64,000 bases of DNA from assembly GCA_044892525.1 (NCBI GenBank), contig CM097885.1:1488001-1552000 (forward strand), read 5' to 3'. A program made the translations under genes and the position numbers. The notes beneath the pieces were generated by a model, which saw nothing but the letters and a program-made list of their open reading frames with translations, was not told where the DNA came from and ran no database searches. Of the stretch, positions 9,583-43,465 are shown piece after piece. The stretch comes from Schmidtea polychroa (Eukaryota). The first letter of the stretch is position 1; each line of letters opens with the position of its first letter.

Positions 9583-9664
9583 GGAAACCATCTTACACAC
9601 AACCATGAATTAATCTGGCACACTCTTCTATCAAATAATAATATTTACTTAATAATAATACCCG

Positions 9665-22190: not shown

Positions 22191-22227
22191 AACTCCATAA
22201 AGCAGTAGTATGTAATAAGGACTCAAA

Positions 22228-23066: not shown

Positions 23067-23099
23067 AGGCTGAAAGGGAGAGGTTCTCACCCTTAGAGT

Positions 23100-23500: not shown

Positions 23501-23699
23501 ACATTTACCCATTGATAATTGTGAAAGACGAAAAGATGAGCCTTGAATGTCACATTCTTTTCTTCTATTATGGTAGCAGAGCGTGGTTCCGTCTACCCAG
23601 CCGGAACAAGGTAATTGATGATTGTCAAATATATTTTTTGTATTTATGTATTATGATAAAAAATGTAATGGCAACTAATATTTTTAAAATTGAAATTGA

Positions 23700-23943
23700 A
23701 ACAAGTGAAGGGATTTATGATTACGGGTTTGGAAAGTTATCAGCTATTCAAGCTAGAGCTACAAATCAAATTGTTAAAAGTCGTGATGTAATTGCTCAAG
23801 CAGAATCCAGTACTGGTACAACTTCATTAATCGCGATATTCTCATTGCAATTAACTGATAGCGATCCTTGTGAAACTCAAATGTTAACACCTTTGACGAC
23901 TAGAGAATTGGCACAACGAATACGAAAGACATTACGTGATTAG
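23700..23943 (+). pseudogene. eIF4A-family DEAD-box helicase N-terminal fragment
   Basis: GIYDYGFGKLSAIQARA..KSRDVIAQAESSTGTT..ETQ..TRELAQ matches eIF4A/eIF4AIII GIYAYGFEKPSAIQQRA..GRDVIAQ.QSGTGKT..PTRELA. Walker A is degenerate and the fragment is truncated. Confidence 0.8.
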
Positions 23944-24049
23944 TTTGTGAATTATTTTATGAAATATAAAATGTATGTTATATTTTTTGAAACATTTCCC
24001 CTAGGGCCTGCCCTCCCTAAACTTATTAAAAAATAAATTAAATAAATTT

Positions 24050-24277
24050 GCGCAATTATTTGTAAGGACGTTGACAGGGAAGATTATCACGATTGAAGTT
24101 GAATCAAGCGATACTATTGAAAATGTGAAAGCGAAGATTCATGAAAAAGAAGGGATAGCCCCAGGTCAACAAAAACTTAATTTTGCTGGTAAAACATTAA
24201 AAGATGGCTTTACTTTATCAGATTATAATGTTAAGAAAGAATCTACGTTACATCTGGTCTTGGGTCTTGCAGGGGAA
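24050..24277 (+). pseudogene. Diverged ubiquitin unit (76 codons once one G is restored)
   Basis: [75 protein letters not shown]. Confidence 0.9.
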
Positions 24278-26530
24278 GTCCAGTATCTGATGTTGAGTTC
24301 GAGGCAGGTTACAAAAGACGAACAGGGTTGAAAATTTCATTAGGGTGTTTACGGAACCGGGCTTTAGGAGATGGATTGGACACTGGGGAAGAACTAAGGA
24401 GAATGGAGGCATAAGAAGACAAGTATGAAGAAGTAATGAATGAATTCGAGGAGCTGAAGAATAATGCTCTGGAGTTAGGACGAAAGAAAGAAGTGAAGGA
24501 AATTGAGGCAGATCTGAAACGATTAGAAGCGGATTTTAGCAGAATCGGTGATCTAGTCCTCATGCAGAAGGAAGAAAGTTTTAAAGTGGATTCGCTGAAG
24601 GTCACAGAGAAATCATTTAGGAGTGAAGATCCAAATGAAAAACAGAAGTTCATAGTGGGATTGAAACCCTTACAGCTTCCGATATTTAATGGAAGGGTAA
24701 TGGAGTATCCTGGATGGAGAGCAATTGCGAGAGCCTGCATCGAGGACACGGATGAACCCAGCGAAAGGAAATGCTTGTACTTGAGACAGTATTTGGAAGG
24801 GAAGCCTTTGCAATTTATTGCCTATATTGGATATGGCTCACAGGCTTTCGAGACGGCTATGAAATTATTGGATGAGAGGTACGGGGGACCAGAAAGATCA
24901 TATTCAATGATTTTGTACGCGGTGCAGAAGTTCCTTCCAGTAAGACTCAACGTATTGGAGGACCTAGAGCGGTTTGAAGAGTTGTTGGGAAATCTCATCC
25001 TGAATTTCAAGGACCAAAAGAGAGAAGGCGAATTGAACATCGGAATGTTGTATCATCAACTGCTGAAGAAGTTGCCAGAAACCATGCTAATTCAGTGGTT
25101 ACGTAATTGTGACTCAGGGAGAGAAGCAAATGTAGAAACTTTAGTCGATTGGATCAAAAAGGAAGCTAATAGGCATCGGCATGCATTGAGCATACTGTTT
25201 GGAGAAGGGCTAACAAAAGATAGAACTGTCACACCAACAACCAACTTCGTAAATGTGAATAAGGGCACTAATTTTACGGATAGTAGGCGAAAGATAGAGG
25301 GTAGTAGTGCTCGAAAAAAGGAACCAATCTGTGTGAAATGTGGATCTGAACATTATTTGAATCAATGTCCGGAACTTTTACAATTGAAAGTAGCAGCACG
25401 AAACGACCTTGTTAAAGAATTAAGACTTTGTTTTAACTGTTTAGCTGTAGGCCACTTCCTCAGGAACTGCGAGAGGTCCAGCTTCTGTAAGGATAGAAGT
25501 TGCAAAACAAAGCATCATTTTCTTTTGCATGATTCAGATTGCAAAGCTGAGGATAGTCAAATGAAGGCGATAAATGAAAACACATCAATGATGACGGTTC
25601 AGAGTTACTTTGCGGTAACTGAAATGTTGAATGACGAGTTACGGGCATTTCTGGGAATTGAGGACACGCAATTCGACAGGAGTAGGGCATCTAATGAAGA
25701 GCAAGGAGCTCAGAGTCATTTAGATGGGCAAATATTCAATTCTGGAGGAACTAACGAATTAGTTAACGTCATTACAATCACACAAAATATTCAAGGAGAA
25801 ATGAATACATGGGAAAAGCAAGATGAGGCTTGCCGGGCTGGTCAGATCATAAGATTATCCGAAGATAAAATTGTGGAACCGAAGACAAGGATGTGTTGAG
25901 TAATTGGGAAAAAGACAAACCAGCATCAGAGGATCTAACGCCCGAGGCGGCGGTTAATGATATTCAGCTCGATGAAGCAGAAGTTAATCGACTAAAAGAA
26001 GAACGTGATAATGTTCAAAGGGCCAAAGAAGTTATGGATTTAACAGAAAATTTTAACGAACCATCGAACAGTTTCAAATAACACGGATCGTTTGAACTCA
26101 TTTGCACCCGTCTAAAGATGTACATGAAAGACAAGGTGTCAATTGTGGAATTGAAACACGAAGCAATCAAAGAACTACTTTGTAGGAGTCTTATAAAAAC
26201 GTCAAGTGAAAACTGGTCACTGAATGAAATGTAACAGGGAAAAGTGTGGATTATTGAATTGGCAAAAAATGAAGGAAGAATAATGGAGATATTACACCTA
26301 AACAAAATGAACGGTGACAGTGGCTTGGCCGAGAATGTCGATGGTTGGTGGAGAATCCACCATGATGTCTCAAAAAAGGTGCGTGGTGCGGCGGTTTATG
26401 TAATGCAAAGATGGGTGTGTGAGGGTTATTGGAGATTGAGCAAATGAAAAGAGTTATTGGTACCAATAACTGAGGTTTCCCCCTAAAGTAGGTGAAGTTG
26501 TTGATCCGCTGGAAGGGATCAAGGAGGGGG
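24277..26530 (+). mobile_element. BEL/Pao LTR retrotransposon remnant (gag plus deleted pol)
   Basis: LKPLQLPIFNG...YPGW...KCLYLRQYLEGKP..LLDERYGG (DUF1759-like Gag) and three Cys/His knuckles CVKCGSEHYLNQC, CFNCLAVGHFLRNC, CKDRSCKTKHHFLLH, diagnostic of BEL/Pao. Stop at 24412. A polypurine tract AAGGAGGGGGAAA followed by TGT at 26534 may start a 3' LTR. Confidence 0.85.
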
Positions 26531-26881
26531 AAATGTGTCGACCAGTCAGAGGGGGATTGGCACTCACCTCCTACTGGCAGTTTGTTTGTTGAATGTTCTC
26601 GCGTCTGTGTGCAGAATTATGGTAATATGGATGCGCGCACACATACGCGAGCAAGAGGTTTCTATTTTTTTTAATTTGTAAATTTTGATGTTAATTTAGA
26701 TTTAGAATTGATTGTAATTCTAGAAATTGTTTTACTAAATCAATTGATTTGGTATTCTGGAATGGATCTTAAATTTTGGTGGAATTGAATTTAATTCTAG
26801 TGATTAATGGAATTCTAAGTTTTTTTTTCTAAATGAATTGATTTGAACTCGATTGGATTTTTTTGTATTCTGAAATGAAAT

Positions 26882-27169
26882 ATGGAAGATAATGAATGTT
26901 TGATATGTCGTAATTCAATGAGCAATATAGCGAAGGTAATATTTGAAAGTTGTAGACATGCGTTTTGTATCTGTTGCGCGAAGAGATGTCTTTCCAGCAG
27001 TGAAACTTGTCCATGTGATCGTGGCTCAACAAGATCGTTGCAGATTATTAATGGAAGTTTATCAAAACGATTGGAAATCAACGATTTAATTTCTGTAAAT
27101 CATGAAATGACAGAAGAGGAACTCCAAGATATTTTTATGAAATTTCCCCAAAAGTTTAAAGATATTTAA
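26882..27169 (+). CDS. Small intronless C3HC4-type RING finger protein (95 aa)
   Basis: CLIC..SCRHAFCICC..CPCDR; the terminal CPxDR variant resembles PHRF1/SCAF11 RINGs. Confidence 0.65.
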   Translation: MEDNECLICRNSMSNIAKVIFESCRHAFCICCAKRCLSSSETCPCDRGSTRSLQIINGSLSKRLEINDLISVNHEMTEEELQDIFMKFPQKFKDI

Positions 27170-27266
27170 GTTTAAACCATTTATGACATTAGCGATAAAA
27201 AGATAAACTTGCTAACTTATGAATATGATATGCTATTCAATCGAGCTCTTAAAAAGATCAACACAA

Positions 27267-28045
27267 TGTTGTACCCGGTAATTTAGCGGCTTTTGACATT
27301 CGGTTAGAAACAGGAACACTTTCATTAAAATATGTCATTGAATCCGCAAACTTTTCTTGCATATCACACAAATATAATAGTGAATTTTCCAACGCAATTA
27401 ATATCACAAATTTCAATATATTTAAAGACAGTTCAATTTTTATACACAAATTAGAAATTTTATGGAAAAAGTTCATTTTTTTTTGGAATATATAAACAAG
27501 CCAGGAAATCTTTTACAAAATTTCTACATATAAGTAAACAAAATTACAAAGAATACAAAATTATGTCATTCGATAAAAAATAAACAGATTTTTAAAAATA
27601 TGTAATTTAAAAAGCTTAACGATTTTATAACGTTCGCGTAAGAATTTCAAATAGTCAATTTCTAATAATTAAATGCAGAATAAACAAATTTAGGTTTTAT
27701 ATTATTGTTAGGATTTGTTCCGTATTTCGCGAATTGTAATGGATGAGGGTGTTGGTCTATGAGAGCCAACACTAAAACTATTGGGAGCCGAATACAGTTT
27801 ATCTTGATAATGATAACATGGCATCGAATTTGCTTTACTCTTCTGAGATTGATTAATAGAGCCTGATTGATAAGTAGAAGTATTAGCTGATCGCACGAAT
27901 TTTGATTGACTGTTATTGTGTTCTGTTTGGTCCTTAGTCGCTGGTGACCGCGCATTTATATATATAATATAATATCGTATAATATAATATAATATAGTAT
28001 AATAGGTATATAGATATTGTTAAGGCCGTGTAACGGCTCACTACA
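27267..28045 (-). repeat. 3' LTR (779 bp)
   Basis: Near-identical to 34159-34916. Confidence 0.95.
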
Positions 28046-28214
28046 TCAGCCCCACGGGAAGTCGCGGAGCGCACAGGGACTCAAGAATAGAGATTGATGA
28101 AAGATCTACTAGAAACAAGATGTAAGTCGAAAAGTAGTGACAATTTATCAAAGGTAGATAGTGTCTAAAAAGGAAATCGGTGACTGATGAATTAATTGAT
28201 CACATGGAATAAAG

Positions 28215-31200
28215 TTAAGTGAATTTCAGCATCAGATGTGTCAAGTTTTCATTGGAATAGACTCTGGCAAGTCTTGGAGGTTTGGAAATGTCTTCCCCAA
28301 TTTGGCGCACCCAAATCTTATCACTATGTTTCACATTTTTCGCGGTTCGCTGCTTGTCGGGTTTCGAAACAATTGAGCGAAGATTAAGTGGATTTGTTGT
28401 TGCTGAATGTGTATTCTCTGTAGCTAAATTTTCATCGCGTTGGTAGTTTGTGATCATGGTACGCGCGATTTCGTTTGAGTCCGTGGCCGGTTCTACTGAA
28501 AGGTTTTCGTTCGACGTAGTTGAAATGGGTTCGACTGAGACTTTCTCTAAATCAGAATGAAGTTTGTCTTCGTCCACGTCATCAGAAATCATAAAAGCCG
28601 GTTTAAGTCGGCACAAATTTATATTTTGGGTAACACCGTTAATAACGATGTGAGCATTGTTATCCTTAATGTCGATCAATTTGTAAGGCCCCGAATATCT
28701 CGGTTTGAGACCTGAATCCGTAATAAACGTGAGTTGCGTCCTTGAAGGACTTTGGGACGTACGGTGTATATGAGGAAGCATAAGAAAACTGTGGGTTGCT
28801 ATCGATCGAAAGAAAATGATCTCTAGCCATATCTAATTCCTCAAAGGTAGGAGCGTTATCGAAATCAACTAATTCGTTAGGTAACGATGTTGAAGAACCA
28901 AAAAGTAACTGTGCCGGTGTAGTTCCGGTAGTCCTGGAGGGTGTGTTACGCCAACCAAGAAGGACAAAAGGTAAAGCTTTAGTCCAATTAAGTCTCGATG
29001 AAAGTATTCCAAGAGAGGTCTTCAAAGTTCGGTGAAATCTTTCGATCATGCCGTTTGTCTGAGGATGGTAAGCAGTTGAACGGAGGTGTTGTATACCGAG
29101 CTTTTCAGTTAGCTGTTGAAATAACTGGGATTCAAACTGAGATCCCCTGTCTGTGATTATTGATTTCGGAACACCGTATCTAGAAATCCAATGTTGCAAA
29201 ATTGAATTTGCTACAATTTCAGCAGAAATGTTTTTCAGAGGAATAACTTCAAACCAACGCGTTTTCCGGTCAATCATAGTTAATAAGTAAGAAAAACCGC
29301 GATCAGAAGGCAAGGGGCCGACCAGGTCGATGTGAAGAATTTCGAACCTATTTCCGGTCGGATAGTGAATCATCTGTGGCTTAGTGTGTCTAGTTATCTT
29401 GTGTTGTTGACAACCGATGCACTGACTCACCCACAATTTAATATCGTGCCTCATTGCTGGCCAAACCACATGTGAATGCAATAGGTTGAAGGTAGCCGAC
29501 GAACCTGGATGATGTAAGTCGTGAATGGAGTGGAAAGCTAATTTCCGTAAGGAATCGTGCAAAATCGGTCTTAAAACACCTGATAAAGACGAGTCAAAGT
29601 GTACTCCGTCCACGATTTCAAGCTTATCGCCAAAAGCAGCTAGATCTTTTGCCGAAGGTGGATTGTCGCGGAGGCACTGTACTGGAAAAATCGGATCGTG
29701 CAATATAGCGTTGGTACTGCGGGAAAGACAGTCTGCAATAACGTTTTCTTTGCCGGCAATGTGGCGTATTTCGCAAGAAAATTCTGAAATATAACTGATT
29801 TGCCTCTGTTGTCGTGGAGATGGGTCTTTCATTCCAAAAAGATAAGTTAGCGGTTTGTGGTCAGTGTAGATGACAAAAGTAACGACCTTCAAGCAAGTGC
29901 TTGAAATGTTTGATTGAAAGATATATGCCTAAGAGTTCTCGGTCGAAAGCCGAATATTTCCGTTGAGCGGAAGAAAGTTTCTTTGAGAAAAACTCTAAGG
30001 GTTCAGAAATGTCATTATGTAATTGATGTAATACTGCACCAATAGCAACGTTTGATGCATCAGTGGTCAGACTCCAAGGTAAATCAGCATTGGGAAAATG
30101 GAGTGTTTGGATTTTCGAAAGTGCCGACTTAGCGTTTTCAAATGCACTGAGTGTGGTATCGCTCCATGACACTAAAGACTTTTTTGGTTTTGAGACGAGA
30201 CCTGAAAGAGGTGACAAAATGTCAGAAACCCCTGGAATAAAACGATGACAATAGTTTATCGTTCCCAAAAAACTTCTCAGTTGTGAAACTGTTTTTGGAA
30301 GTGGGAATTTGGCTATGGTATCTAGTCTATCCGGAGGAGGTCGGATTCCATCTGCGGAAATTAAATGTCCCAGGAAACGAGTCTCGTGTTGGAAGAAAGT
30401 ACACTTATCGACGTTTACCTTAAGGTTGTATTGCCGAAGTGCTGTTAAAGTTCTTGTTAGATGGGTTTTATGCGTCTCTAAGTCAGGTGATCCGACTAAA
30501 ATGTCGTCTATGTAAGGAACTGCGAAAGGTAGGTCCATTAAGACTTGATCAATATACCTTTGAAAGGTCTGTGCAGAATTACGAAGGCCAAATGGCATAT
30601 GCACGTACTCGAAAAGTCCGATCGGAGTTATTACGGCTGTTTTTTCTATGTCAGACTCTCGCACGGGTATCTGATGGTACGCCTTCACGAGGTCGATTGT
30701 GGAGAAAATCTTTGCCTTTGAAAGACGGTGAAGGATATCACTAACAAGCGGCATGCTATAGGAATCATGTACCGTAATAGCATTAAGGTTTCGATAGTCG
30801 CCACACGGACGGAAAGTGCCATCTTTTTTTGGGACCAGGTGCAATGGCGATGACCATGGAGATTTAGATCTCCGAATGGTACCCTCATGTAAGAGGTTAG
30901 TAAACTCGGAACGTACAAATTCGAGTTTTTCATTCGACAGTGGTCTAATTTTGCATCTAACTGGTAAAGATGAAGTTGTGTCGATCGTGTGGCAGTAAAG
31001 CGGCTTCAAAACGTCACTTATTGGCGTGTTAAAACACCTATTAATAATATCTAAGGCTATTTTTGGGTGTTCGATTGTTATAACCGTTTTCGACGGAGTA
31101 GTATTTATATCGTCCGTTCCTATCCGTTGTGGATCTTCAAAGATGTTTGAGGGAATAGTGCTGCAGTTTAATTGATTATTTATCCTTAAAGTGCGTCCGC

Positions 31201-31582
31201 GGCAATCTACGAGTAGTTCGTTAGCGCTTAAAAAATCAGATCCTAATATGGGGATAATAACCTCTGCTATATAAAATTTCCACTCAAATAATTGGTCGGA
31301 CAGAAATGGCAACGAGAAAGCAATTGTCTTTGAACCTAAAGTCTCAACAACACTACCGTTTGCGGCCTTCAAAGAAATATCGACAGTGTTGAGGTCTGGA
31401 AGGTACTCTTTAGGTAAGATCGACAAGCTGGAACCAGTGTCGACAAGGAATTTTAGTCTATTGGAAGGAGACGACAATATATTAAAAGCGTTTGACTCTG
31501 CTTCTATTAAAAATAAATCTGATTTCGATGAAATTTTGCCTCCCACCTCTGCCGCTAGAAGTGGTGGCATTATAAGTTTTTT
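28215..31582 (-). CDS. pol (protease, RT, RNase H, integrase) with two apparent 1-bp frameshifts
   Basis: FLVDTGSS; YIDDIL; TDAS..SAFDREL; TDHKPL; HDLHHPG..CIGC; DLVGPLP..TDRGSQF..GMIERFHR; PRYSGPY. Frame breaks at ~29880 and ~28725. Confidence 0.9.
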
Positions 31583-34368
31583 TGATTGCTTGCTTTAGGT
31601 TTTGTGTAATTGGAGCAGCCTTCGAAGCATTTTAAGGCTTTATCTCCAAACCTGTCGTGGTATATGCACTTGTCAAGTATCTGACAGGATGGTGCTTTAT
31701 CTCGCCAATTGCAACCTAGATGGCAGAACCGTGCCTTGTTACGAAACTTAAAATGGAAACGGCACAGGTTCCTGGTTGCAGGGGAAGGTGAACGTTGACG
31801 AGTATTTCGCACAAAGTGTGATTTTTGGGCATATTGCCTGTCGTCATTTGTCCGCCTGGTGGACATGCTATTTTCAAGCTCGCTGATGCGTTTAGTGAGG
31901 CCTGTAATAGCGCAAAGTAAGGCTTCTTCGGTCGAAGGTTTTAAAGAAGAAGAAGAAGGTAAAATTTCGGGGTTAGTGCTGCTACTTAACTGCACAGAGC
32001 AAGTTGGTTGCGGACCAAGTGGCACGACTTCGTTAATCTTGTCGGCCATCTTTGCTAGCTCTACCACGTCTGCTGTTGACGAAAGCGCTAAAATTTGTTG
32101 TGCGTGTGGCGGTAAAGCAGACAGAAAAAATTGCCTCAAGAGTTTTTGATCCGCCGCAGCCTCCGGGTGTATTTGCGTTAGTTCCGCCATAGCGTGTTGC
32201 AAGAACTGTGATGGTTTTCTGCTGCCCAAAGTTTGCGTCTTAAAGTATTTAGTGAAGACGGCAGCTGTAGGTTCCTTAAAAATATCGAGGATTGCCGTAC
32301 GCAATTCTTCATATGGGTTTTTTACGCTAGTAGGCGAAGTGCGAAGGATCACGGACGAAAGTTTACTTAATATCGTCGGCGGAATCAACGGCAAGATGCG
32401 ACAGTATTTGTCTCGTGAACTGGTTACCTCGATTCCCTCGAGTGCTAGTTCGGTAGCTATCAGCCAAGTAAGTGGAGAGTTATTCTCATCCAAAAAATAT
32501 TGACATAGGTACGTTGATCGCTGGTTGTTGGACCTACGTTTATGTTTTGCCTGTTTGGGGTTGCTGCCTGAGTCATTCTCCGAATCGGAGGAACCGCCAG
32601 AAAGTGGCAACAAGCAATGAATGACGCTGCATGGTGTCACTCCATAGTCGCCCAAGGTACGACTGTCGGAAAGGATGTTGCCATTATACGACAAGAGAAA
32701 ACGGCATTTGTGATTTGTCAATATGCTGTAATTTTTAGAAAGACCTCTAATTGTAGTGTCTGTGTCAACTGAAACGGTTTGTGTCTTATTTGTTACAGGG
32801 TTTTCTATTAATATTTGGAACTTTTTGGGCCCCGGTGCGGCGCTACCCTCTCGTGTGGGCTGATGCTTATTTAAATAATTTATTATAATTTTATATATGA
32901 TATCAATAATAATATAAATCAATAATAATATAGTATAATTTAATAATAATATAATAATATAATTTAGAGGTAATCGATCTAAGGTACCTGGCGGTGCTGA
33001 CACGGGCATTGCTTGATTGAGTCTCGATTCGCTGGGAGACGGTTTATTATCCTGAATAAATGGCTGTCCCGGTGCACGAGAGTTTAATGTGAAAAAATCA
33101 TTATTCTGTTGCATTAAGAATTCATTTGGATTTGGTCGAAGCATGATGCGTTGTGGGGCTGTGTATAAGACATCACTCGTTAGCAATTTGTTATTTGGTA
33201 TATAATTATTGATCGGAGTCATTTTTTTACGATTTTCAACGGCAATCATCTCAGCCAATGCTTGCCGGGAAACATTAATCGAATCAAAATCTATATCGGC
33301 TGTATCTTTATATTTCTGATCGTAATGTGAATTCGGTTTCTCCGAGCCAAATATGCGATTTATATCCATTTCGTTTCGATCCTGATACTGACCGTAGTTA
33401 AGCACACCGTTGTTGTTTGCCTGTTGATTGATGTTGTGATCGTATGACTGATTATTATTGTTGTTATTCTTGATTGCGGCGTGGTTTTGAGAATTTAACT
33501 GGCGGAAACTTTCCAGCAGAGAATTCGACGAACCAACTGAATTCAAACTGTTCATAAATGATTTCTGATCTGAAAGCCGTGACAGGGGAGATGTGGAATT
33601 CAGTGTACTGTGGAATTCAGTAATATCATTACCAGCTGAGCTATTGAAAGCACTGAATAGGGGAAATTCGGATTTAGTATCCGATGATTCAGATTGTAAT
33701 TGAATACTTTTCTTGATAAATTTGAAAGACGATTTATTTATCGGGTCAGCAATTATCAATTGACCATTTGGAATATGATTATTATCTGTGATATTTGCAG
33801 GGGTCGAAATGGAATCACCTAGAACGACTACGGGATCCAAAGAATCACGATCTGGAATTGTCTGAGTTAATTTGATATACTCTTCTCGATTCGATGACAA
33901 ACAACAGGAATGAGCAATTATCAATTGATCTATCAGCCTATCAATATCATGGGATATAGGATTAAATTTTGATGAAAGTTTTAATTCAGAAAATATTTTG
34001 GAAAGCATATGGAACATATTTTGACGTAATTCCGCTGTTCGTTTATGAGAAACTAATATAGATTGTATTTCCTGTAATCTGGATTTAGCAATGATATTAG
34101 ATAAATAAGTTTCTAATTGTTCAAATCTTGAACATTGTTCTGGCACTTCTGACACCAATGTTGTACCCGGTAATTTAGCGGCTTTTGACATTCGGTTAGA
34201 AACAGGAACACTTTCATTAAAATATGTCATTGAATCCGCAAACTTTTCTTGCATATCACACAAATATAATAGTGAATTTTCCAACGCAATTAATATCACA
34301 AATTTCAATATATTTAAAGACAGTTCAATTTTTATACACAAATTAGAAATTTTATGGAAAAAGTTCAT
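31570..34368 (-). CDS. ORF1, 932 aa: unknown N-terminal region, hydrophobic segment, ubiquitin-like domain, Gag (CHCC knuckle)
   Basis: A single open frame. UBL at 32820-32593 ends LPLSGG. Gag motifs PLTWLIATE..KYCRILPLIP..PYEELR..LGSRKPSQFL..FFLSALP and CRFHFKFRNKARFCHLGC. Slippery A-AAA-AAC at 31582-31576. Confidence 0.85.
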   Translation of the reverse strand: MNFFHKISNLCIKIELSLNILKFVILIALENSLLYLCDMQEKFADSMTYFNESVPVSNRMSKAAKLPGTTLVSEVPEQCSRFEQLETYLSNIIAKSRLQEIQSILVSHKRTAELRQNMFHMLSKIFSELKLSSKFNPISHDIDRLIDQLIIAHSCCLSSNREEYIKLTQTIPDRDSLDPVVVLGDSISTPANITDNNHIPNGQLIIADPINKSSFKFIKKSIQLQSESSDTKSEFPLFSAFNSSAGNDITEFHSTLNSTSPLSRLSDQKSFMNSLNSVGSSNSLLESFRQLNSQNHAAIKNNNNNNQSYDHNINQQANNNGVLNYGQYQDRNEMDINRIFGSEKPNSHYDQKYKDTADIDFDSINVSRQALAEMIAVENRKKMTPINNYIPNNKLLTSDVLYTAPQRIMLRPNPNEFLMQQNNDFFTLNSRAPGQPFIQDNKPSPSESRLNQAMPVSAPPGTLDRLPLNYIIILLLNYTILLLIYIIIDIIYKIIINYLNKHQPTREGSAAPGPKKFQILIENPVTNKTQTVSVDTDTTIRGLSKNYSILTNHKCRFLLSYNGNILSDSRTLGDYGVTPCSVIHCLLPLSGGSSDSENDSGSNPKQAKHKRRSNNQRSTYLCQYFLDENNSPLTWLIATELALEGIEVTSSRDKYCRILPLIPPTILSKLSSVILRTSPTSVKNPYEELRTAILDIFKEPTAAVFTKYFKTQTLGSRKPSQFLQHAMAELTQIHPEAAADQKLLRQFFLSALPPHAQQILALSSTADVVELAKMADKINEVVPLGPQPTCSVQLSSSTNPEILPSSSSLKPSTEEALLCAITGLTKRISELENSMSTRRTNDDRQYAQKSHFVRNTRQRSPSPATRNLCRFHFKFRNKARFCHLGCNWRDKAPSCQILDKCIYHDRFGDKALKCFEGCSNYTKPKASNQKNL
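34144..34157 (-). other. Primer-binding site complementary to a tRNA-Leu 3' end
   Basis: TGGTGTCAGAAGTG lies one base after the 5' LTR; it complements the ...CACUUCUGACACCA end of eukaryotic tRNA-Leu. Confidence 0.8.
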
Positions 34369-34916
34369 TTTTTTTGGAATATATAAACAAGCCAGGAAAT
34401 CTTTTACAAAATTTCTACATATAAGTAAACAAAATTACAAAGAATACAAAATTATGTCATTCGATAAAAAATAAACAGATTTTTAAAAATATGTAATTTA
34501 AAAAGCTTAACGATTTTATAACGTTCGCGTAAGAATTTCAAATAGTCAATTTCTAATAATTAAATGCAGAATAAACAAATTTAGGTTTTATATTATTGTT
34601 AGGATTTGTTCCGTATTTCGCGAATTGTAATGGATGAGGGTGTTGGTCTATGAGAGCCAACACTAAAACTATTGGGAGCCGAATACAGTTTATCTTGATA
34701 ATGATAACATGGCATCGAATTTGCTTTACTCTTCTGAGATTGATTAATAGAGCCTGATTGATAAGTAGAAGTATTAGCTGATCGCACGAATTTTGATTGA
34801 CTGTTATTGTGTTCTGTTTGGTCCTTAGTCGCTGGTGACCGCGCATTTATATATATAATATAATATAGTATAATAGGTATATAGATATTGTTAAGGCCGT
34901 GTAACGGCTCACTACA
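34159..34916 (-). repeat. 5' LTR (758 bp)
   Basis: Begins TGTAGTGAGCCG, ends GGTACAACA, and contains a TATATATAAA tract near its 5' end. Confidence 0.95.
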
Positions 34917-35039
34917 CACAACTCCAATGTTTATTAGCCGAAGTGTTGAACAATTATCCAATGTTTTAAATTCAATCATGGCTCAATCTCAAGTTATTGG
35001 ACACGATAAATGGTTTTGTACAAATAAAGCTTGTGACAT

Positions 35040-35217
35040 TAATTACAATGAAATTCTTCTGATGTGTCTTAAATTTAAACAATATGTGTTGTCTATATAT
35101 TTGGTAGCTGCTATTGATTGCGGCTACACAGGCTTTTTTGGCAAGCTCCTTTATTTCATTATTTGATAGGCCGATAATTTTGAGTAATGAGTCGTTATTT
35201 TTATCCCATGATTCCAT
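35040..35217 (-). pseudogene. Extreme 3' coding end of a 5'-truncated NeSL/Utopia-like element
   Basis: ESWDKNNDSLLKIIGLSNNEIKELAKKACVAAINSSYQIYRQH matches the 'GsW...N..ll..lGl......l.......i..S..Iy..H' C-terminus. Confidence 0.6.
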
Positions 35218-35636
35218 GATCCCATGATTTTTTAATTTAATTAATTAAGTATTTTATAAATATTTTATTTTAATTACTTGCGTTATTTAATTATTATTAT
35301 TTATTTATTATTATTATTATTTTTTTTTATTTTACATTACATTTAATATATTCTAACAAGAGCGTAAATTATAACATTAATATTTCAATTTGAATAAATT
35401 TTTAATTAGTAATTATTCAATTTGAATAAAATTTAAATTAGAAATTAATTAATTTATTATAAAATAAATAAACCGGATAGTAATTTTTTCGGAAAAAATA
35501 AATAAATAAAATAAACAAGAAAATAATAATTTTTTTTACTTGAAACTAATTATCTAAATTAATTGGACAAATGAATTAATAAATGATAAAACACATTTTA
35601 ATTAACTAAGTCAAATTATTCACTATATATATATAT

Positions 35637-38600
35637 TAGGGTGGGTCGAAAATTTTTTTTTCTCCAAACATGCCTAAAAAGTTGTGCTTATGCTAGAAAA
35701 TGAAATATCCCTGCAAAAGACTGCTGTTTAAAAGGGTTTACAGGTCCCAACTTTTGTTTGTATGTATTAGTACTATCCCAGTAAAAATGCTCGCACACGT
35801 GCCATTGTAAATTCATCCTGCAAGCAGTCACACGCTTGCAGAAAGACCATTTTTGACATGCTCTATTCACAAGTCCAAGCTAACGCGTGCATGTATAGAG
35901 AGGTTAATTCACGGAAGCACCTTCACACAAGCACTCACAAAGACAATTTCTTCTGAACAATACTAACACACACACTACAGTCAACACATAATCCACATGG
36001 ATACTACTAGTCAGTCTAAACTCAGATAATTTAATTTGTTTCGATTGGATGTCAAGTGTTTGCTGGACCTAATTAAAAAAGTTAACTTGATGATTCACTT
36101 TTATTTTGCCAGAGCTGAGTACAGAAGAGCAGTTATGAAGGGACAGAGAAATAAGCAATTTCGCAAAACAAGAAGTAAATCACGTCATTGTCTGTTTGGT
36201 CAAACTTGTGAACTACCCAGAAACCAATTACCTACTTGTGAAGATGTGTTTCGTGATTACTGTTACAATGAGAAATGTACGCAATTTCATACTGGCTTTA
36301 ACGAACAAGCAACTCTTCTCGCAAATAAGATGAAGGAAATTTATATGAAGGCAAGTATCCCAACTGTTGAGTTCAGTAGTATTGTGGTTCGTGTCAAGCG
36401 ACTAATATCAAAAGTGCGTGAATTAGAGAAGTATCCAGAATGCAAGAGGCCATCTGCCAAATTTCAAGATAAGTTAAGCTCGTTTTCCAAATTGTTTGAC
36501 ATATGTTGCTGCAAATGTTTTAATGATGGTGCTCGTGGAAGAAGTCAGTGTACATACCGATTGGCCTTGAAAATTCCTACCTTAGAGTGGGAGTTCTGGA
36601 TTGACCAACAAACTACCAGAAACATGAAAATCGGAAATACGGACAGACAGGAAACCTCAAAATTGAAGAGAAAACAAACGAAAAGCAGCCCTACAGGAAA
36701 AGGAAAACAAATGAAAAATGAAATAATGGACACTGAAGTTAACGATCTACATCCGACCTCAAGAAGTGACACGGAGAGTGAAGTCGCTAGTGATGAAAGT
36801 AAAGATAAGTTAGACAATTCAACAGAAAGCTCAGAGTCAAGCGTAGAAGAATGTGATGAATTTCAAAATAGAAGACATTATCCTGAATTAAGTAAAGCTG
36901 TTGACAGATGTGGTGTGAGCAACAGAGACACGTGTTTGCTAGTAAACGCTTTTCTGAAAGATATGGAACTGTTATCCTCTCAAACAATCATCGATCCCGC
37001 AAAATTACGGTGTCAGAGAAAGTACTGGAGGGAGAGAGAAATTGAACAGCATTCAGCAGAAGCGAAAAACTTGATTTGCCTTGGTTTCGACGGGAAACAA
37101 GATTCCACCTTACCTCATAGAAGGATCCTAAAAGAGGAGCATAATGTGATTGTCGCCTTTCCAGGGGATACATATATCGATCATGTTGTACCTCAAAGTA
37201 GTAAAGCTGTGGATATTGGCAAAGAAATCATGTCAATCATCGTTAGCACGCAGTCCTCACTGACCCTTCAAGCAATTGTGTGCGATGGAACCAATACAAA
37301 CACCGGAAAAAATAATGGAATAATCAGAAGACTTGAAAAAAGCCTAGGGCGACCTCTACAATGGCTGATATGCTTGTTGCATGCAAATGAATTGCCATTC
37401 AGGAAGTATTTTTCAGTCGTCGATGGTGGAGAAACAAAAGGTCCAAAAACGTCATGTGGTGAAATAGGAAGCGTTCTTGATTTTGATCCAAAAGACAAGC
37501 CCGTAGTAGCCTTTATGTCCCTTCCTGGAAAGGTCGTAGATATTAGTGAAAATGTCAAGAAAGAATTGAACACTGATCAATTGTATTTCCTCAGAGTATG
37601 CTTGGCAGTCCAGAAAGGGTACCACAACAACAAGGATGTCCCTTTTCTACAAATGGCACAACCAGGAAATTTGAATCACAGTCGCTGGCTAACGAAAGCT
37701 AATAGAATTCTGCGACTATATATGTCCGAAACTGCTCCATCTGAACCTCTCATGCGAATAGTGAAATTTATTGTCAATTTCTATGGACCGTCATGGTTTT
37801 ATATAAAGACTCACTCGTCATGCCAAGATGGTGCAAGAAATATTTTTTATATGCTCCAACTTCTGCAGGATTTGGATCCATCAGACCAAGAAATCATCTT
37901 TCCTGTCATTCAGAACAACAATTACTTCTCACATCCAGAAAATATACTCCTAGCTGCTGTTGGTGATGATGATGAAGAAATCAGAAAGTTTGCAACAGAA
38001 AAAATCATAACTGCAAGACAAAATTTTCTCCCTTCCGAAGTGATTCGCACTATGGACAAGAATACTGTCTTTCTTCAGTCGTCTGCTACATCATATGTTG
38101 ACATGATTGACTGGAAAAAATGTAGTTTGACGCCTCCCCCTCTTTTATCTCATATATTGGATCATGAATTGAAGATGAATAAGAAAATTACATTAGAACA
38201 ATTTCCCTGTCATTCTCAAGCCGTTGAAAGAGCCATCAAAGATGTTTCTTCTGCCAGTTGCAAAGTGTTTGGTCACAAGTCCAGACATGGTATGGTACTA
38301 CTGAGTAAAAAATCAAGGAGGGAATTGCCCAAGGTGCAAAGCAAAGCTGATTTCATGTGACTTCTTTTTATGCCCTCGCTAATACATTTCTAAACTTTTG
38401 GCTGGATGTTTTTAATAAAAAATAATTTCGAAAGTTGATTTTTGTCTTTGAAAAGGATAATTCAAATTTGGCCCTTCCTAATCACTGACGTTGTCAGGAT
38501 ATATTTCAATGCGGGATGAGGACACAGAATATACTATCTCAGCCCAAGAGAGTAAATAATATACTTATAAGCTCTTAAGAAAGCTACATCTAAATATGGA

Positions 38601-41267: not shown

Positions 41268-43465
41268 TTGGCTGTAACCAATCTCGATCGACTGCTGATG
41301 TACAGAGGTAGAGTAGAAGATGTTAGAATCCAATCATATTGGTGCCATACGTGTTTTCATGGGTTTCAAAAACGTCCTGCTTTTGAAAGACATATAAAGC
41401 TTTGTAAGAAGAATGTGGAGCGGACTACTCTATACTCAATGCCAGAATATAAATATATCGAATTTAAAGACTGGAGTAAAACTATCAAACAGCAGTTTGT
41501 CGTCTACGCGGACTTGGAATCAATATTACCTTTTGATTACAAGCACTTTAAAAAACATGAGCCGATTGCATCTGCATTTGTGCTTCTTCATCAAGGTTAC
41601 CCGATTCGAAATGAAACATTTGTTGGGAAAAACTGTATCATTCAGTTCATACAAGCATTGGATGATATAGCTACAGACATAGTTTATCCGTGGTATAAAA
41701 TTAATGGATCAAAGGAAATTATGGAACTCACTTGGGAACAGCAGGAAGAATTCACGACTCAAACTCATTGCTACCTTTGTAAAAAGATTATCAATATACC
41801 TGTTCGAGATCATGATCATTTTACTGGTCAATATCTCGGAGCAGGATGTCAAGATTGTAATTTGGCTAGAAGAATCAATCCGTCTTTACCTGTTGTATTT
41901 CACAATCTTCGTGGATATGACATTCATCATATATTAAAATATGCAATTGGAAAATTCCCCGATTGTAATTTAATTGTTATTCCACAATCAACAGAAATCT
42001 TTCTCACACTTACAGCGACATCGAAAGGCAGAAGAATTAGATTCATTGATTCATTGCAATTTTTAAATAGCAGTTTGGCAAATTTATCAAAAAACTTGCC
42101 ATGTCTTCCACTTACCTCAAAGATTTTCAATTCGCATCTAATAACTGGTAAAGGCATATTTCCTTATGATATGGCTACATCAATGGATGTTTTACCAATT
42201 TGGGAGGGAGTTAGTCAAGAAGATTACATACATGCAAATCGAAACTGGCAACAATACAACTATGAGACACTGCTCGATTACATGCTCATATATCTCAAGT
42301 TGGATATTTTTCTATTAGCAGATATTTTCGAGGCTTTTTTTCAGGCTTTCGTTTGTTTCCATATCTGGATTAAGTTGGGCATCAGCTATGAAACAATTAG
42401 CTGAACCGATAGAACTTATTCAAGATCCAGAGCTTTACCGTTTATTTGAAACTGGTATTCGTGGTGGAATGACATTTATCAACAAACACCATGGTGAAGC
42501 TGATGAGTCAACACAAATGTCATACCTAGATTTTAATAATTTATATGAATGGGCTCTATCGCAAAAACGTCCTATTGGTGAATTTAGATGGCTAGAAGAT
42601 CAGACTGAAATGGATAGTATTATTAAAAGATGTATGAATGGCGATGAGTTTGATGGAGATGGTGGATATGTTTTGGAGATTGACATCGTCATTCCAGATA
42701 GTATACAAGATCAACTAGATGATTTACCTATAACTCCTGAGCTTTGTTATCCGCATGGTAGTAAAGTTGAAAAGTTGTTATTAACACACGAACCTAAGAA
42801 TAACTATGTAGTTAATAGTAGAGTTTTGAATGACTGGTTGAGTTACGGCTCAAAAGTCACAAATGTTAATCGCGCTGTAGAATTCAAGCAAGTAGCTATT
42901 TTCAAACGATATATTTATTAGAATACTCAAATGAGAGCAGCTAATACAGATTTATTTCAGCGAGATTATTATAAGTTAAAGAACAACAGTTTATACGGTA
43001 AAACCGTGGAAAACCTTAAGAAACGTATAAACTTGAGATTATGTAACAAAAGCAAAAGATTGATAACTTATTTTAGTAATCCTATGTTTCGTCGAAGCAT
43101 CCAGATTGCAGATGATCTCATTGATGTTATACTCGATAAGGAAATTGTGTGTTTAAGTAGACCTATGTATATTGGACAAAGCGTACTTGATTTATCTAAG
43201 TTAAGGATGTACCAGTTTCAATATAAAGAACGACAGAGTTATAGAGAAGAATTCAATGGTCAAATTAATATCGTAGCCGGTGACAGATTCCTTCTTTTTA
43301 GAGTGTAAAAATGTTGATTTACGATTAGAACTGTATCCAAAAATGATTTCCGATGGGCTGCTAGATACTTCAAATTATCCAGTGATCGATCCGTTGTTCT
43401 CAGATAAAATTTGTTCTGTAATCGGGAAAGTCAAGGATGAGAATAAAGGAAAACAATATAAAGAA
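41268..43465 (+). pseudogene. Protein-primed DNA polymerase B (Maverick/Polinton/adintovirus-type), frameshifted
   Basis: CHTC..HIKLC, VYADLESIL, VRDHDHFTG..CQDCNL, VFHNLRGYD, RFIDSLQF, KGIFPY, YLKLD..LLADIFE, GIRGG, YLDFNNLY, YKLKNNSLYGKT..N..KR, P.YIGQSVLDLSK. Confidence 0.92.

What the first reader, a model, noticed from the sequence alone, without database searches (positions are those of the whole stretch)
32593..32820. Ty3/gypsy Gag preceded in frame by a complete ubiquitin-like domain ending in Gly-Gly
Seen: exactly 76 codons, FQILIENPVTNKTQTVSVDTDTTI...LSYNGNILSDSRTLGDYGVTPCSVIHCLLPLSGG, align end to end with ubiquitin. They are followed by SSDSEND.., a basic patch and the capsid and CHCC knuckle. 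All of this sits in one ORF within an element bounded by LTRs and a TSD, so the UBL travels with it. Known: host deubiquitinases cleave linear fusions after GG (Ub-L40, Ub-S27a, FUBI-S30), and pestiviruses use captured ubiquitin as a polyprotein processing signal. I do not know of this being described for LTR retrotransposon Gag. Inference: a host protease, not the element's own, releases mature Gag (and Gag-Pol) with a defined Ser N-terminus from a ~590-aa leader.
Basis: partly seen in the sequence, partly recalled or inferred. Interest (0 to 1): 0.85.

Follow-up and report, generated by a model that had tools for sequence, protein, structure and literature searches.

The report
Ubiquitin-like cleavage module before retrotransposon Gag
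A jumping gene of the Ty3/gypsy type carries a ubiquitin-like domain ending in Gly-Gly directly in front of its capsid protein, and this module is conserved across a whole family whose upstream "leaders" are unrelated and often hold captured host-gene pieces, which suggests that host ubiquitin-type proteases cut the capsid protein free.

Summary
Window 32820-32593 encodes 76 residues that pass Pfam's ubiquitin threshold (41.9 bits), align to ubiquitin residues 4-76 and model as a beta-grasp (TM up to 0.92). They end in Gly-Gly and sit in one 932-codon ORF with a Gag carrying two CHCC knuckles. The element has 98.8%-identical LTRs and a 5-bp target duplication. The feature is family-wide. Of the 35 closest Gag relatives among 1.84 billion proteins, 28 carry a UBL-type tail ending in GG at the same place. 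In 33 such relatives GG is invariant, position 72 is Arg/Lys in 27, and the residue after GG is never Pro. dN/dS of the UBL is 0.25 in one close pair. Leaders upstream of the UBL are unrelated between relatives. Two elements 92% identical in DNA diverge completely at the first UBL codons. Several leaders hold host fragments (histone H2A, DIS3L1 plus CNOT1, cohesin SA, 5'-nucleotidase, WWE). Best reading: a processed UBL lets a host protease release Gag and Gag-Pol from a swappable N-terminal cargo. Cleavage itself is untested. No description was found in the searchable literature. All UBL-bearing relatives come from unannotated metagenome contigs.

The parts
27262..27266 (.). Target-site duplication, copy next to the 3' LTR (CACAA on the + strand)
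   Evidence: Read directly from the sequence at both LTR outer edges.
27267..28045 (-). 3' LTR (779 bp; TG..CA on the element's strand). It holds a (TATAA)n simple repeat.
   Evidence: blastn of the two ends gives 98.8% identity over 745 columns. TRF finds the repeat.
28257..31591 (-). pol (protease, reverse transcriptase, RNase H, integrase, in the Ty3/gypsy order). This copy is broken by two frame changes and has no in-frame stops. pol starts in the -1 frame relative to gag and overlaps its end.
   Evidence: Pfam on the separate ORF pieces finds RVP, RVT_1, RT_RNaseH_2, Integrase_H2C2 and rve. tblastn of the intact 1120-aa pol of L001 gives 3 segments, 2 frame changes, 57% identity and outer bounds only.
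31573..32592 (-). Gag proper (ORF1 residues 593-932): disordered acidic/Ser linker, helical capsid-like region, coiled helix, two zinc knuckles. The stop codon is at 31570-31572.
   Evidence: Translation. Weak DUF7041 match, 25 bits. 2662 relatives in the phmmer search. AF2 models. The best Foldseek hits are Arc, PEG10 and Ty3 capsid domains, but with E > 0.3.
31615..31764 (-). Two C-X2-H-X9-C-X3-C (CHCC) zinc knuckles, ORF1 residues 869-918
   Evidence: Translation. The Cys/His columns are invariant in alignment A2 and at least 90% conserved in A3. pLDDT is about 95.
32026..32472 (-). Helical capsid-like core, ORF1 residues 633-781
   Evidence: AF2 helices at pLDDT above 90. Foldseek probability 0.89-0.98 for Arc and PEG10 capsid C-terminal domains.
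32473..32592 (-). Linker after Gly-Gly, ORF1 residues 593-632. It begins with Ser, is Ser/Asp/Glu-rich, then has a basic patch, and is predicted disordered.
   Evidence: Translation. pLDDT is about 50. In relatives the 25 residues after GG are enriched in Asp+Glu (0.16 against 0.09 for the whole proteins) and Pro (0.11 against 0.05).
32593..32820 (-). Ubiquitin-like domain, 76 codons, ORF1 residues 517-592, ending in Gly-Gly
   Evidence: GG is invariant in alignment A1.
32821..34368 (-). Leader, ORF1 residues 1-516. It is in frame with the UBL and has no detectable homologue or Pfam domain. The first 70 codons are LTR sequence.
   Evidence: The reading frame has 0 stops in 516 codons, against 38 and 51 in the other two frames. 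The chance of no stop is about 4e-17. No Pfam hit. No homologue found.
32870..32963 (-). Degenerate AT-rich simple repeat inside the leader. It translates as an Ile/Leu/Tyr/Asn-rich stretch just before the UBL.
   Evidence: TRF and sequence. It could be removed by one in-frame 138-nt GT..AG interval, which is untestable without RNA data.
34159..34916 (-). 5' LTR (758 bp). The first ATG of ORF1 (34368) lies inside it. A TGG-starting candidate primer-binding site follows 2 nt after its inner end.
   Evidence: The same 71-codon ORF piece is present in the 3' LTR.
34917..34921 (.). Target-site duplication, copy next to the 5' LTR (CACAA on the + strand)

Best explanation
The 76-residue domain is a processed (type I) ubiquitin-like module. 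It is a fixed part of ORF1 in one clade of Ty3/gypsy LTR retrotransposons with CHCC-type Gag. ORF1 is translated as leader-UBL-Gag, and after a -1 frameshift as leader-UBL-Gag-Pol. A host protease specific for ubiquitin or a ubiquitin-like protein then cuts after the terminal Gly-Gly. This frees Gag and Gag-Pol with a new N-terminus, Ser in this copy, whatever lies upstream. Because the cut depends only on the UBL, the region between the 5' LTR and the UBL is free to vary. It can be nearly absent, be an orphan sequence as here, or hold pieces of host coding sequence that are then made in equal amount with Gag. Shown here: the fold, the GG, the single ORF, the LTR and target-duplication bounds, conservation of the module across the family, purifying selection on it, and the non-homology and host origin of leaders. 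Inferred: the cleavage itself, the protease that does it, and any function of the leaders.
For: UBL identity:
- Pfam 41.9 bits.
- PDB ubiquitin aligned over residues 4-76.
- AF2 beta-grasp with pLDDT about 90-96.
- Foldseek TM up to 0.92.

One ORF inside one element.

Family-wide conservation:
- 28 of the 35 best Gag relatives carry a GG tail at the predicted place. The other 7 have fewer than 60 residues upstream.
- 33 of the 39 relatives with at least 60 residues upstream have it.
- G75 and G76 are invariant in A1.
- PF00240 is recognised in 11 of 35 members on their own.

Tail and cleavage-site features, n = 33:
- Arg/Lys at position 72 in 27.
- Leu at position 73 in 28.
- The residue after GG is Ser in 14, Asn in 4, and never Pro.
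- GG background frequency elsewhere is 0.0028 per position.

Core hydrophobic columns are kept, while the positions matching ubiquitin's Ile44 and Lys48 are not.

Selection, L012 against L007: dN/dS is 0.25 for the UBL and 0.14 for Gag.

Leader modularity:
- No similarity between leaders except one pair.
- P0005 and P0008 are 91% identical from the UBL onward and unrelated before it.
- At DNA level, the 91.7% identity starts within a codon or two of the UBL start.

Host pieces in leaders:
- Near full-length histone H2A starting at its own Met.
- About 320 residues of DIS3L1 N-terminus plus a CNOT1 MIF4G piece.
- Cohesin SA HEAT.
- 5'-nucleotidase, and WWE.

Leaders lie inside elements: the window itself; L014, which has an LTR pair; and L003, which has pol end, about 490 bp, then the H2A leader.

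The window's leader frame has 0 stops in 516 codons.
Against: - No protein or RNA data exist, so cleavage is inferred from conservation alone.
- The window's tail has Pro at 72 and Ser at 74, where 27 of 33 relatives have Arg/Lys at 72. This copy's UBL may be a poorer substrate.
- Many family UBLs are under 25% identical to ubiquitin and have lost the Ile44-patch positions, so ordinary ubiquitin-specific enzymes may not recognise them. No candidate protease is identified.
- The window copy has a pol broken twice, so it is not itself proof of a working arrangement.
- In two relatives (L014, L016) the upstream ORF is in a different frame from UBL-Gag, so a fusion is not universal. It is unclear whether that is decay or design.
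- Most relatives are gene calls on short metagenome contigs of unknown organisms.
Confidence: 0.62

Rival explanations
1. The released product is the point. After the cut at GG, the UBL, alone or carrying its leader, exposes a C-terminal Gly-Gly. It then acts on the host ubiquitin system as a conjugatable modifier or as a decoy or chain terminator. Freeing Gag is secondary.
For: GG is invariant and Arg/Lys at position 72 is kept in 27 of 33 relatives. From general knowledge of ubiquitin, position 72 matters for recognition by the activating enzyme. Some members carry near-canonical ubiquitin, PF00240 81.5 bits in P0022.
Against: Most family UBLs are very diverged and do not keep the positions matching ubiquitin's Ile44 patch or Lys48. 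The UBL is often preceded by hundreds of unrelated residues, which is an odd form for a modifier. This reading also needs cleavage at GG, so it is an addition to the best explanation rather than an alternative.
Confidence: 0.12
2. The UBL stays attached and works as an integral (type II) ubiquitin-like domain of Gag. It would serve, for example, to dock to proteasomes, ubiquitin receptors or the budding and trafficking machinery, as the UBL of Ddi1 does next to a retropepsin-like domain.
For: The beta-grasp fold is well kept. From general knowledge, retroviral Gag uses ubiquitin in budding, and papers on this were seen.
Against: From general knowledge, integral UBL domains do not need a terminal Gly-Gly, yet here it is invariant in 33 of 33 with an Arg/Lys-Leu-x-Gly-Gly tail. 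From general knowledge, a linear fusion with an intact GG tail would be expected to be cut in cells. Surface positions used by ubiquitin receptors are not conserved. A disordered linker follows GG.
Confidence: 0.12
3. The element's own aspartic protease, not a host enzyme, cuts at or near the UBL-Gag junction. The UBL would be only a folding or solubility aid for the N-terminus.
For: pol encodes a retropepsin. From general knowledge, LTR elements normally process Gag themselves.
Against: From general knowledge, retropepsin sites are not Gly-Gly-defined, so invariant GG at the exact end of a ubiquitin fold is unexplained. From general knowledge, cleavage by the element's protease would happen late and only in particles, whereas leaders of up to about 880 residues with foreign domains would have to be packed first.
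Confidence: 0.06
4. The arrangement has no function. On this reading the UBL would be a chance capture of a host ubiquitin gene piece, or the pattern an artefact of ORF calling or chimeric assembly.
For: Relatives are mostly automatic gene calls on short metagenome contigs. The window copy is defective in pol.
Against: The window shows the whole arrangement between intact LTRs with a target duplication. The module recurs in dozens of elements only 25-45% identical in Gag. Purifying selection acts on the UBL. The same H2A-UBL-Gag ORF occurs at 98% identity on two contigs.
Confidence: 0.03

Closest known systems
Cellular ubiquitin and UBL fusion precursors (ubiquitin-eL40, ubiquitin-eS31, FUBI-eS30, polyubiquitin)
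   Same: A ubiquitin-fold domain ending in Gly-Gly is fused in frame to the N-terminus of another protein. From general knowledge, host deubiquitinases release that protein. PMC6721733, seen, treats the ubiquitin moiety as needed for productive expression of eL40.
   Different: Here the cargo is a retrotransposon Gag or Gag-Pol. The UBL is strongly diverged, about 30% identical to ubiquitin. In this copy it is internal, preceded by 516 residues, not at the N-terminus.
Cytopathogenic pestiviruses with inserted host ubiquitin or ubiquitin-like sequences upstream of NS3
   Same: A host-derived ubiquitin-fold sequence inside a polyprotein supplies a cleavage site used by host enzymes, so processing is outsourced. 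The sequence was acquired by recombination with host RNA.
   Different: In pestiviruses the insertions are sporadic in individual isolates of an RNA virus. Here the module is fixed across a diversified clade of LTR retrotransposons, sits before Gag, and is under purifying selection.
Ty3/gypsy elements with a CHCC Gag motif (CsRn1/Boudicca-type clade; recalled from memory, no named reference was retrieved)
   Same: LTR element with protease, reverse transcriptase, RNase H and integrase in that order, and C-X2-H-X9-C-X3-C knuckles in Gag.
   Different: I know of no UBL or long leader described for that clade. Full-text searches combining CsRn1, CHCC, gag and ubiquitin found nothing relevant. Phylogenetic placement was not tested.
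Ddi1/Ddi2 (UBL plus retropepsin-like domain)
   Same: A ubiquitin-fold domain stands N-terminal to a retroelement-type module. PMC7072860, seen, describes their retroviral-like proteases.
   Different: From general knowledge, the Ddi1 UBL is an integral domain without a processed Gly-Gly end. Here GG is invariant and is followed by a disordered linker.
Gene capture by LTR retroelements and retroviruses (transduced host genes; crocodilian ERVs, PMC4299795; extra ORFs in bdelloid rotifer LTR elements, PMC5408684)
   Same: Host or foreign coding sequence is carried inside an LTR element. Contiguous host fragments such as 320 residues of DIS3L1 point to capture from spliced RNA (inference).
   Different: Captured pieces here sit upstream of Gag, in frame, and are separated from it by a UBL-GG module. 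PMC5408684 does not mention ubiquitin.
Viral 2A peptides (functional analogue only)
   Same: A short in-frame device lets one ORF yield separate proteins without the element's own protease.
   Different: The mechanism is different. By general knowledge 2A acts through ribosomal skipping, whereas here a host protease would act on a folded UBL.

Membership tests
Ubiquitin family (Pfam PF00240), processed type I UBL | Sequence match above the curated threshold | tested here: met
   41.9 bits against a gathering score of 25.4 for the 76 residues alone, and 35.6 bits within ORF1.
Ubiquitin family (Pfam PF00240), processed type I UBL | Beta-grasp fold | tested here: met
   AF2 pLDDT 89-96. Foldseek finds ubiquitin, NEDD8 and ISG15 chains at TM 0.80-0.92.
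Ubiquitin family (Pfam PF00240), processed type I UBL | C-terminal Gly-Gly at the end of the fold, conserved in relatives | tested here: met
   GG is at residues 75-76. It is present in 33 of 33 relatives.
Ubiquitin family (Pfam PF00240), processed type I UBL | Proteolytic processing after Gly-Gly | not testable with these tools
   This needs protein data. Only indirect support is available: no Pro after GG, a disordered linker, and variable leaders.
Ubiquitin family (Pfam PF00240), processed type I UBL | Ubiquitin's own functional surface (positions matching Ile44 and Lys48; Arg at 72 and 74) | tested here: not met
   The window has Ser44, Asn48, Pro72 and Ser74. The family keeps Arg/Lys at 72 in 27 of 33 but not positions 44 or 48. 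So this is a UBL, not ubiquitin itself.
Ty3/gypsy (Metaviridae) LTR retrotransposon | Two LTRs ending TG..CA, flanked by a short target-site duplication | tested here: met
   LTRs of 758 and 779 bp, 98.8% identical, with a 5-bp duplication.
Ty3/gypsy (Metaviridae) LTR retrotransposon | pol domain order: protease, reverse transcriptase, RNase H, integrase | tested here: met
   Pfam on the pol pieces. 57% identity to the intact pol of L001.
Ty3/gypsy (Metaviridae) LTR retrotransposon | Gag with a capsid fold and zinc knuckle(s) | tested here: inconclusive
   Two knuckles are clear. The helical core is confidently modelled, and the best Foldseek hits are Arc, PEG10 and Ty3 capsids. But E is 0.3 or higher, and DUF7041 scores 25 bits, below its threshold of 28.
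Ty3/gypsy (Metaviridae) LTR retrotransposon | Primer-binding site and polypurine tract | not tested
   A TGG-starting stretch follows the 5' LTR. No tRNA comparison was made.
CHCC-Gag (CsRn1-like) clade of Ty3/gypsy | CHCC instead of CCHC knuckle | tested here: met
   C-X2-H-X9-C-X3-C occurs twice. The Cys/His columns are conserved.
CHCC-Gag (CsRn1-like) clade of Ty3/gypsy | Phylogenetic grouping of RT/pol with named members | not tested
   No named reference came back from any search. All close relatives are anonymous metagenome proteins.
Ubiquitin-fusion precursor architecture (Ub-eL40 type) | UBL at the very N-terminus, starting at the initiator Met | tested here: not met
   In the window the UBL starts at ORF1 residue 517 and position 1 is Phe. 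A near-minimal form, 15 residues before the UBL, exists in relative L015.

The most novel reading that the evidence does not exclude
The UBL-GG module is a general cargo adaptor. Because a host protease separates Gag from whatever precedes it, these elements can pick up pieces of host mRNAs between the LTR and the UBL, swap them, and express them in equal amount with Gag. Some such pieces, for example fragments of the RNA-decay factors DIS3L1 and CNOT1, or histone H2A, might act as dominant-negative or decoy proteins that help the element. The same solution may have arisen independently in a BEL/Pao-type element in this same window, where a DEAD-box fragment and a ubiquitin lie directly upstream of a DUF1759 Gag.
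Probability: 0.3. Interest if true: 0.92.

Novelty: new variant of a known kind. Interest (0 to 1): 0.8.

Why it matters
LTR retrotransposons and retroviruses are thought to mature Gag with their own aspartic protease. A whole clade that places a Gly-Gly-terminated ubiquitin fold in front of Gag would show a second route, in which the host's ubiquitin or UBL proteases make the first cut.

That would be a natural counterpart of the ubiquitin-fusion technique and of pestivirus ubiquitin insertions, but fixed and diversified in a transposon family.

It also gives a concrete reason why these elements tolerate and collect foreign coding sequence upstream of Gag. This bears on how host gene fragments are captured, shuffled and possibly used against host defences.

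Practically, the module is a clear annotation marker for a family that is absent from annotated protein databases. It also predicts a specific Gag N-terminus that can be looked for in proteomic data.

Tried and rejected
**Searches that returned nothing**
- Word-indexed protein searches with ORF1, over the UBL+Gag region and over the leader, found no hits. The full HMMER scan with Gag alone was what worked.
- Exact look-up of ORF1 in public assemblies found nothing, so the source organism stays unknown.
- The window holds no other copy of this element.
- Locus searches were thin. The first alignment was too diverse to search with. A narrower one gave only 6 JGI loci and none in IMG/VR.
- Rfam and tRNA scans of the window, run in the hope of placing the host, found nothing.

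**Is the AT-rich stretch before the UBL an intron that uncouples leader and UBL?**
- It is a degenerate simple repeat.
- The only GT donor pairs with the nearest AG sites out of frame. One 138-nt in-frame interval remains possible.
- This is left open, not adopted.

**Is the sharp leader/UBL boundary a splice acceptor?**
- In the window an AG lies directly before the first UBL codon.
- The L012/L007 junctions show no AG there, so the idea is not supported.

**Other negative or weak results**
- Leaders are not homologous to each other, apart from one weak pair.
- The single relative of the BEL/Pao-type Gag found has no ubiquitin on record, so that second lineage could not be tested.
- Foldseek of Gag alone gives no significant E-value, although the ranking is dominated by retroelement capsids.

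- I built a profile HMM from UBL columns and used it only to scan the window.


Full report
**1. What is at the coordinates**

The plus strand of 32593-32820 is not coding. They are residues 517-592 of a 932-codon ORF on the minus strand, 34368 to 31573.

Several independent tests identify the stretch as a ubiquitin fold:
- Pfam PF00240 scores 41.9 bits (E 8.7e-11) on the 76 residues alone, against a curated threshold of 25.4.
- phmmer against PDB sequences aligns residues 4-76 to ubiquitin 4-76 with a single one-residue gap.
- An AlphaFold2 model of UBL plus Gag, built on 35 sequences, gives pLDDT 89-96 for residues 1-75, with the strand-strand-helix-strand-strand-strand order of a beta-grasp.
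- Foldseek against the PDB returns ubiquitin, NEDD8 and ISG15 chains with target-normalised TM 0.80-0.92, rmsd 1.1-2.0 A and 28-32% identity.

It is a UBL, not ubiquitin. Read against the ubiquitin alignment, the window has Ser at 44, Asn at 48, Pro at 72 and Ser at 74.

**2. The element around it**

The ends are two direct repeats, 34159-34916 and 27267-28045, 98.8% identical. They begin TG and end CA on the element's strand. A 5-bp duplication, CACAA on the plus strand, flanks them at 27262-27266 and 34917-34921.

Downstream of the UBL, ORF1 continues as follows:
- a Ser/Asp/Glu-rich stretch with a basic patch, modelled as disordered;
- a confidently modelled helical region;
- a long helix;
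- two C-X2-H-X9-C-X3-C knuckles.

Foldseek with a Gag-only model gives no significant E-value. Its best hits are nevertheless Arc, PEG10, Ty3, dArc1 and PNMA2 capsid domains, with probability up to 0.98 and TM 0.57-0.64 on the C-terminal capsid domain.

pol follows in the -1 frame and overlaps the end of gag. Its domain order is protease, reverse transcriptase, RNase H, integrase. Compared with the intact 1120-residue pol of relative L001, the window copy has two frame changes and no in-frame stop, with outer bounds 28257-31591.

So this is a young Ty3/gypsy-type insertion with an intact ORF1 and a twice-broken pol.

**3. The leader in this copy**

- The first ATG of ORF1 (34368) lies inside the 5' LTR, and the first 70 codons are LTR sequence. 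The same piece is present in the 3' LTR. The real start codon is therefore unknown. In-frame Met codons occur at 13 places before the UBL.
- The leader frame has no stop in 516 codons, while the other two frames have 38 and 51. The chance expectation is about 4e-17. It is, or very recently was, coding and in frame with the UBL.
- It has no Pfam domain and no detectable homologue.
- Just before the UBL lies a degenerate AT-rich simple repeat, 32870-32963, that translates as an Ile/Leu/Tyr/Asn-rich stretch.
- One GT donor precedes it. The nearest AG sites would shift the frame. One 138-nt interval would be in frame. Without RNA data this cannot be resolved.

**4. Relatives: the module is family-wide**

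A full HMMER scan of 1.84 billion representative proteins with Gag alone (340 residues) found 2662 relatives, 24 of them below 1e-30. I looked upstream of the Gag match in the best 150.

- Of the 35 best, 28 have a GG tail at the place predicted from the alignment, 26 of them with a full UBL length upstream. The other 7 have fewer than 60 residues upstream and cannot be judged.
- Beyond rank 35 most hits are Gag-only proteins.
- Of the 39 proteins with at least 60 residues upstream, 33 have the GG. The six without are distant, at rank 92 or lower.
- In an alignment of the window's UBL+Gag with 34 relatives, the two Gly are invariant.
- Pfam recognises PF00240 in 11 of the 35 on their own, up to 81.5 bits in P0022.

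Tail statistics for 33 relatives:

| Position | Result |
|---|---|
| 72 | Arg or Lys in 27 |
| 73 | Leu in 28 |
| 75-76 | Gly-Gly in 33 |
| residue after GG | Ser 14, Asn 4, Ala 3, Gly 3, Thr 3, Met 3, Val 1, Gln 1, Asp 1; never Pro |
| GG frequency elsewhere in these proteins | 0.0028 per position |

Column by column, the buried hydrophobic positions of the fold are kept (hydrophobic share 0.8-1.0). The positions matching ubiquitin's Ile44 and Lys48 are not.

For one close pair of loci, L012 and L007, dN/dS is 0.25 in the UBL and 0.14 in Gag.

**5. Leaders are modular and often host-derived**

Leaders upstream of the UBL range from 0 to 876 residues. Apart from one weak pair, they show no similarity to each other or to the window's leader.

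The clearest case is P0005 against P0008. They are 91% identical from the UBL to the end of Gag and unrelated before it. At DNA level the 91.7% identity between their contigs starts within a codon or two of the first UBL residue, with about 2.6 kb of unrelated sequence upstream.

Several leaders contain recognisable host protein pieces:
- P0010 starts with a nearly full-length histone H2A from its own Met, aligned 1-116 to H2A 1-122. A 98%-identical copy, P0158, lies on a second contig.
- P0058 holds about 320 residues of the DIS3L1 N-terminus followed by a piece of the CNOT1 CAF1-binding domain.
- P0008 holds a cohesin SA HEAT piece.
- P0011 and P0163 hold a 5'-nucleotidase piece, up to 93.5 bits.
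- The ORF upstream of UBL-Gag in L014 has a WWE domain just above threshold.

These leaders are inside the elements:
- In the window, the leader lies between the LTRs.
- L014 has an LTR pair (91.9% identical) with the leader-like ORF starting 26 nt after the 5' LTR.
- In L003 the order is end of pol, about 490 bp, H2A leader-UBL-Gag, pol.

The arrangement varies:
- L015 has only 15 residues before the UBL.
- In L014 and L016 the upstream ORF abuts the UBL-Gag ORF in another frame. This may be decay or a different mode of expression.

Long contiguous host pieces suggest capture from spliced RNA. That is an inference.

**6. How it most likely works**

An invariant Gly-Gly sits exactly at the end of a conserved ubiquitin fold. 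It is preceded by Arg/Lys-Leu-x, never followed by Pro, and followed by a disordered acidic linker. Everything upstream is free to vary. From general knowledge of ubiquitin-fusion precursors, this is the signature of a UBL that is cut off its C-terminal partner.

ORF1 is made as leader-UBL-Gag, and by -1 frameshift as leader-UBL-Gag-Pol. A host ubiquitin or UBL protease cuts after GG. Gag starts at Ser593.

What I add is the consequence. The module uncouples Gag from its N-terminal context, which explains the swappable, host-fragment-bearing leaders.

The rivals are:
- The freed UBL or leader-UBL is itself the active product. This is compatible with cleavage.
- The UBL is an uncleaved integral domain. 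This fits poorly with invariant GG.
- The element's own protease makes the cut. This does not explain GG.
- The arrangement has no function. Conservation and dN/dS contradict this.

Weak points are as follows. No protein or RNA evidence exists. The window's tail is atypical, with Pro72 and Ser74. Many UBLs are so diverged that the responsible protease is unclear. The relatives come from anonymous metagenome contigs.

**7. Comparison with what is known**

- In function it resembles cellular ubiquitin-fusion precursors and the ubiquitin insertions of cytopathogenic pestiviruses (general knowledge).
- In architecture it recalls Ddi1 (UBL plus retropepsin), but that UBL is not processed.
- As a vehicle of host sequence it recalls retroviral transduction and the extra ORFs of other LTR elements (PMC4299795, PMC5408684). 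The latter paper does not mention ubiquitin.
- The CHCC knuckles recall the CsRn1/Boudicca-type clade (from memory). Membership was not tested, because no named reference came back.
- Five full-text searches found no description of a ubiquitin-like domain in an LTR-retrotransposon Gag. The library lacks most subscription journals and Repbase Reports, so absence is not proof.
- All 20 UBL-bearing clusters looked up are held only by ENA, Logan or JGI metagenome sources, none by NCBI or UniRef.

**8. A second case in the same window**

The gypsy element is nested in an older LTR element. Its repeats are 22608-22967 and 35283-35637, 91.8% identical, and a third copy is inverted near 43472-44070.

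In one orientation that element holds:
- a DEAD-box helicase fragment (23512-23943);
- a near-canonical ubiquitin (24005-24328, PF00240 88.7 bits), whose tail is no longer GG in this copy;
- 108 nt later, a BEL/Pao-type Gag (24436-25899, DUF1759 with CCHC knuckles);
- a RING-finger ORF.

The ubiquitin lies in a different frame from its neighbours, which means two frame changes. No pol is present.

So a second, unrelated Gag family shows the same order of host fragment, ubiquitin, Gag. Only one homologue of that Gag was found, so it stays an observation.

**9. Verdict**

- Observation: confirmed.
- Interpretation: supported by comparative evidence, with cleavage untested.
- Novelty: a new variant of known kinds, namely a Ty3/gypsy element and ubiquitin-fusion processing.
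- Interest: 0.8.

Slip declared: notebook entry 1 lists the bounds of the three pol ORF pieces, which indirectly shows where the frame changes lie.

Noticed in passing
window 22226-35637 (+), especially 23512-25899 and 26882-27169: An older outer LTR element has repeats at 22608-22967 and 35283-35637, 91.8% identical. It holds a DEAD-box helicase fragment, a near-canonical ubiquitin (PF00240 88.7 bits; the tail is not GG in this copy), a BEL/Pao-type DUF1759 Gag 108 nt further on, and a RING-finger ORF. No pol is present. The ubiquitin is out of frame with its neighbours (two frame changes). This is the same order of host fragment, ubiquitin, Gag, in an unrelated Gag family.
   Followed up: partly
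L012:2797 and L007:2693: Two related elements are 91.7% identical in DNA from the first UBL codons onward. The roughly 2.6 kb upstream, which forms an open leader in both, is completely unrelated. This is a sharp recombination boundary at the UBL start.
   Followed up: partly
L003 (P0010), L004 (P0058), L007 (P0008-like), P0011/P0163, L014:411-1721: Leaders of relatives contain host protein pieces: histone H2A from its own Met, DIS3L1 N-terminus plus a CNOT1 MIF4G piece (both RNA-decay factors), cohesin SA HEAT, 5'-nucleotidase, and WWE.
   Followed up: partly
window 34159-34368 and 27264-27476: The first ATG and the first 70 codons of ORF1 lie inside the LTR, so the same 71-codon ORF piece is also present in the 3' LTR. 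The true start codon is unknown.
   Followed up: partly
window 32870-32963; also 27957-28004 and 34848-34888: An AT-rich degenerate simple repeat sits inside the leader ORF without breaking the frame. Similar (TATAA)n repeats occur in both LTRs and account for their length difference.
   Followed up: partly
L001 (ENA ERZ2272490 NODE_73): The closest relative (44% identity in Gag) appears as two tandem 5.07-kb units, 99.2% identical. Each has an intact 497-residue UBL-Gag ORF and an intact 1120-residue pol. Only about 270 bp lie between pol and the next gag.
   Followed up: no
window 53660-57674 (+) and 18692-19573 (-): Pieces of a WDHD1/Ctf4/Mcl1-like gene (Mcl1_mid, Ctf4_C) are spread over several ORFs in a stretch of 51% G+C, well above the roughly 23-42% G+C of the rest of the window. 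A second Mcl1_mid fragment lies on the other strand 35 kb away.
   Followed up: no
window 41268-42404 (+); L005:9871-12567: A Maverick/Polinton-type DNA polymerase B with an endonuclease VII-like piece is in the window. A similar gene lies near relative P0004 on its 32-kb contig, hinting at a related host.
   Followed up: no
window 9115-14293 (+): A second, degenerate Ty3/gypsy-type element: a CCHC knuckle, protease, RNase H and integrase spread over several ORFs. It has no UBL by my profile scan.
   Followed up: no
window 47523-49256 (+): A long internally repetitive stretch carries overlapping ORFs of 300-580 codons. The Pfam hit to a herpesvirus family there has no matched stretch passing on its own and looks like a low-complexity artefact.
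   Followed up: no
window 36036-38360 (+): A 774-codon ORF with no Pfam match lies just beyond the outer element's right LTR.
   Followed up: no
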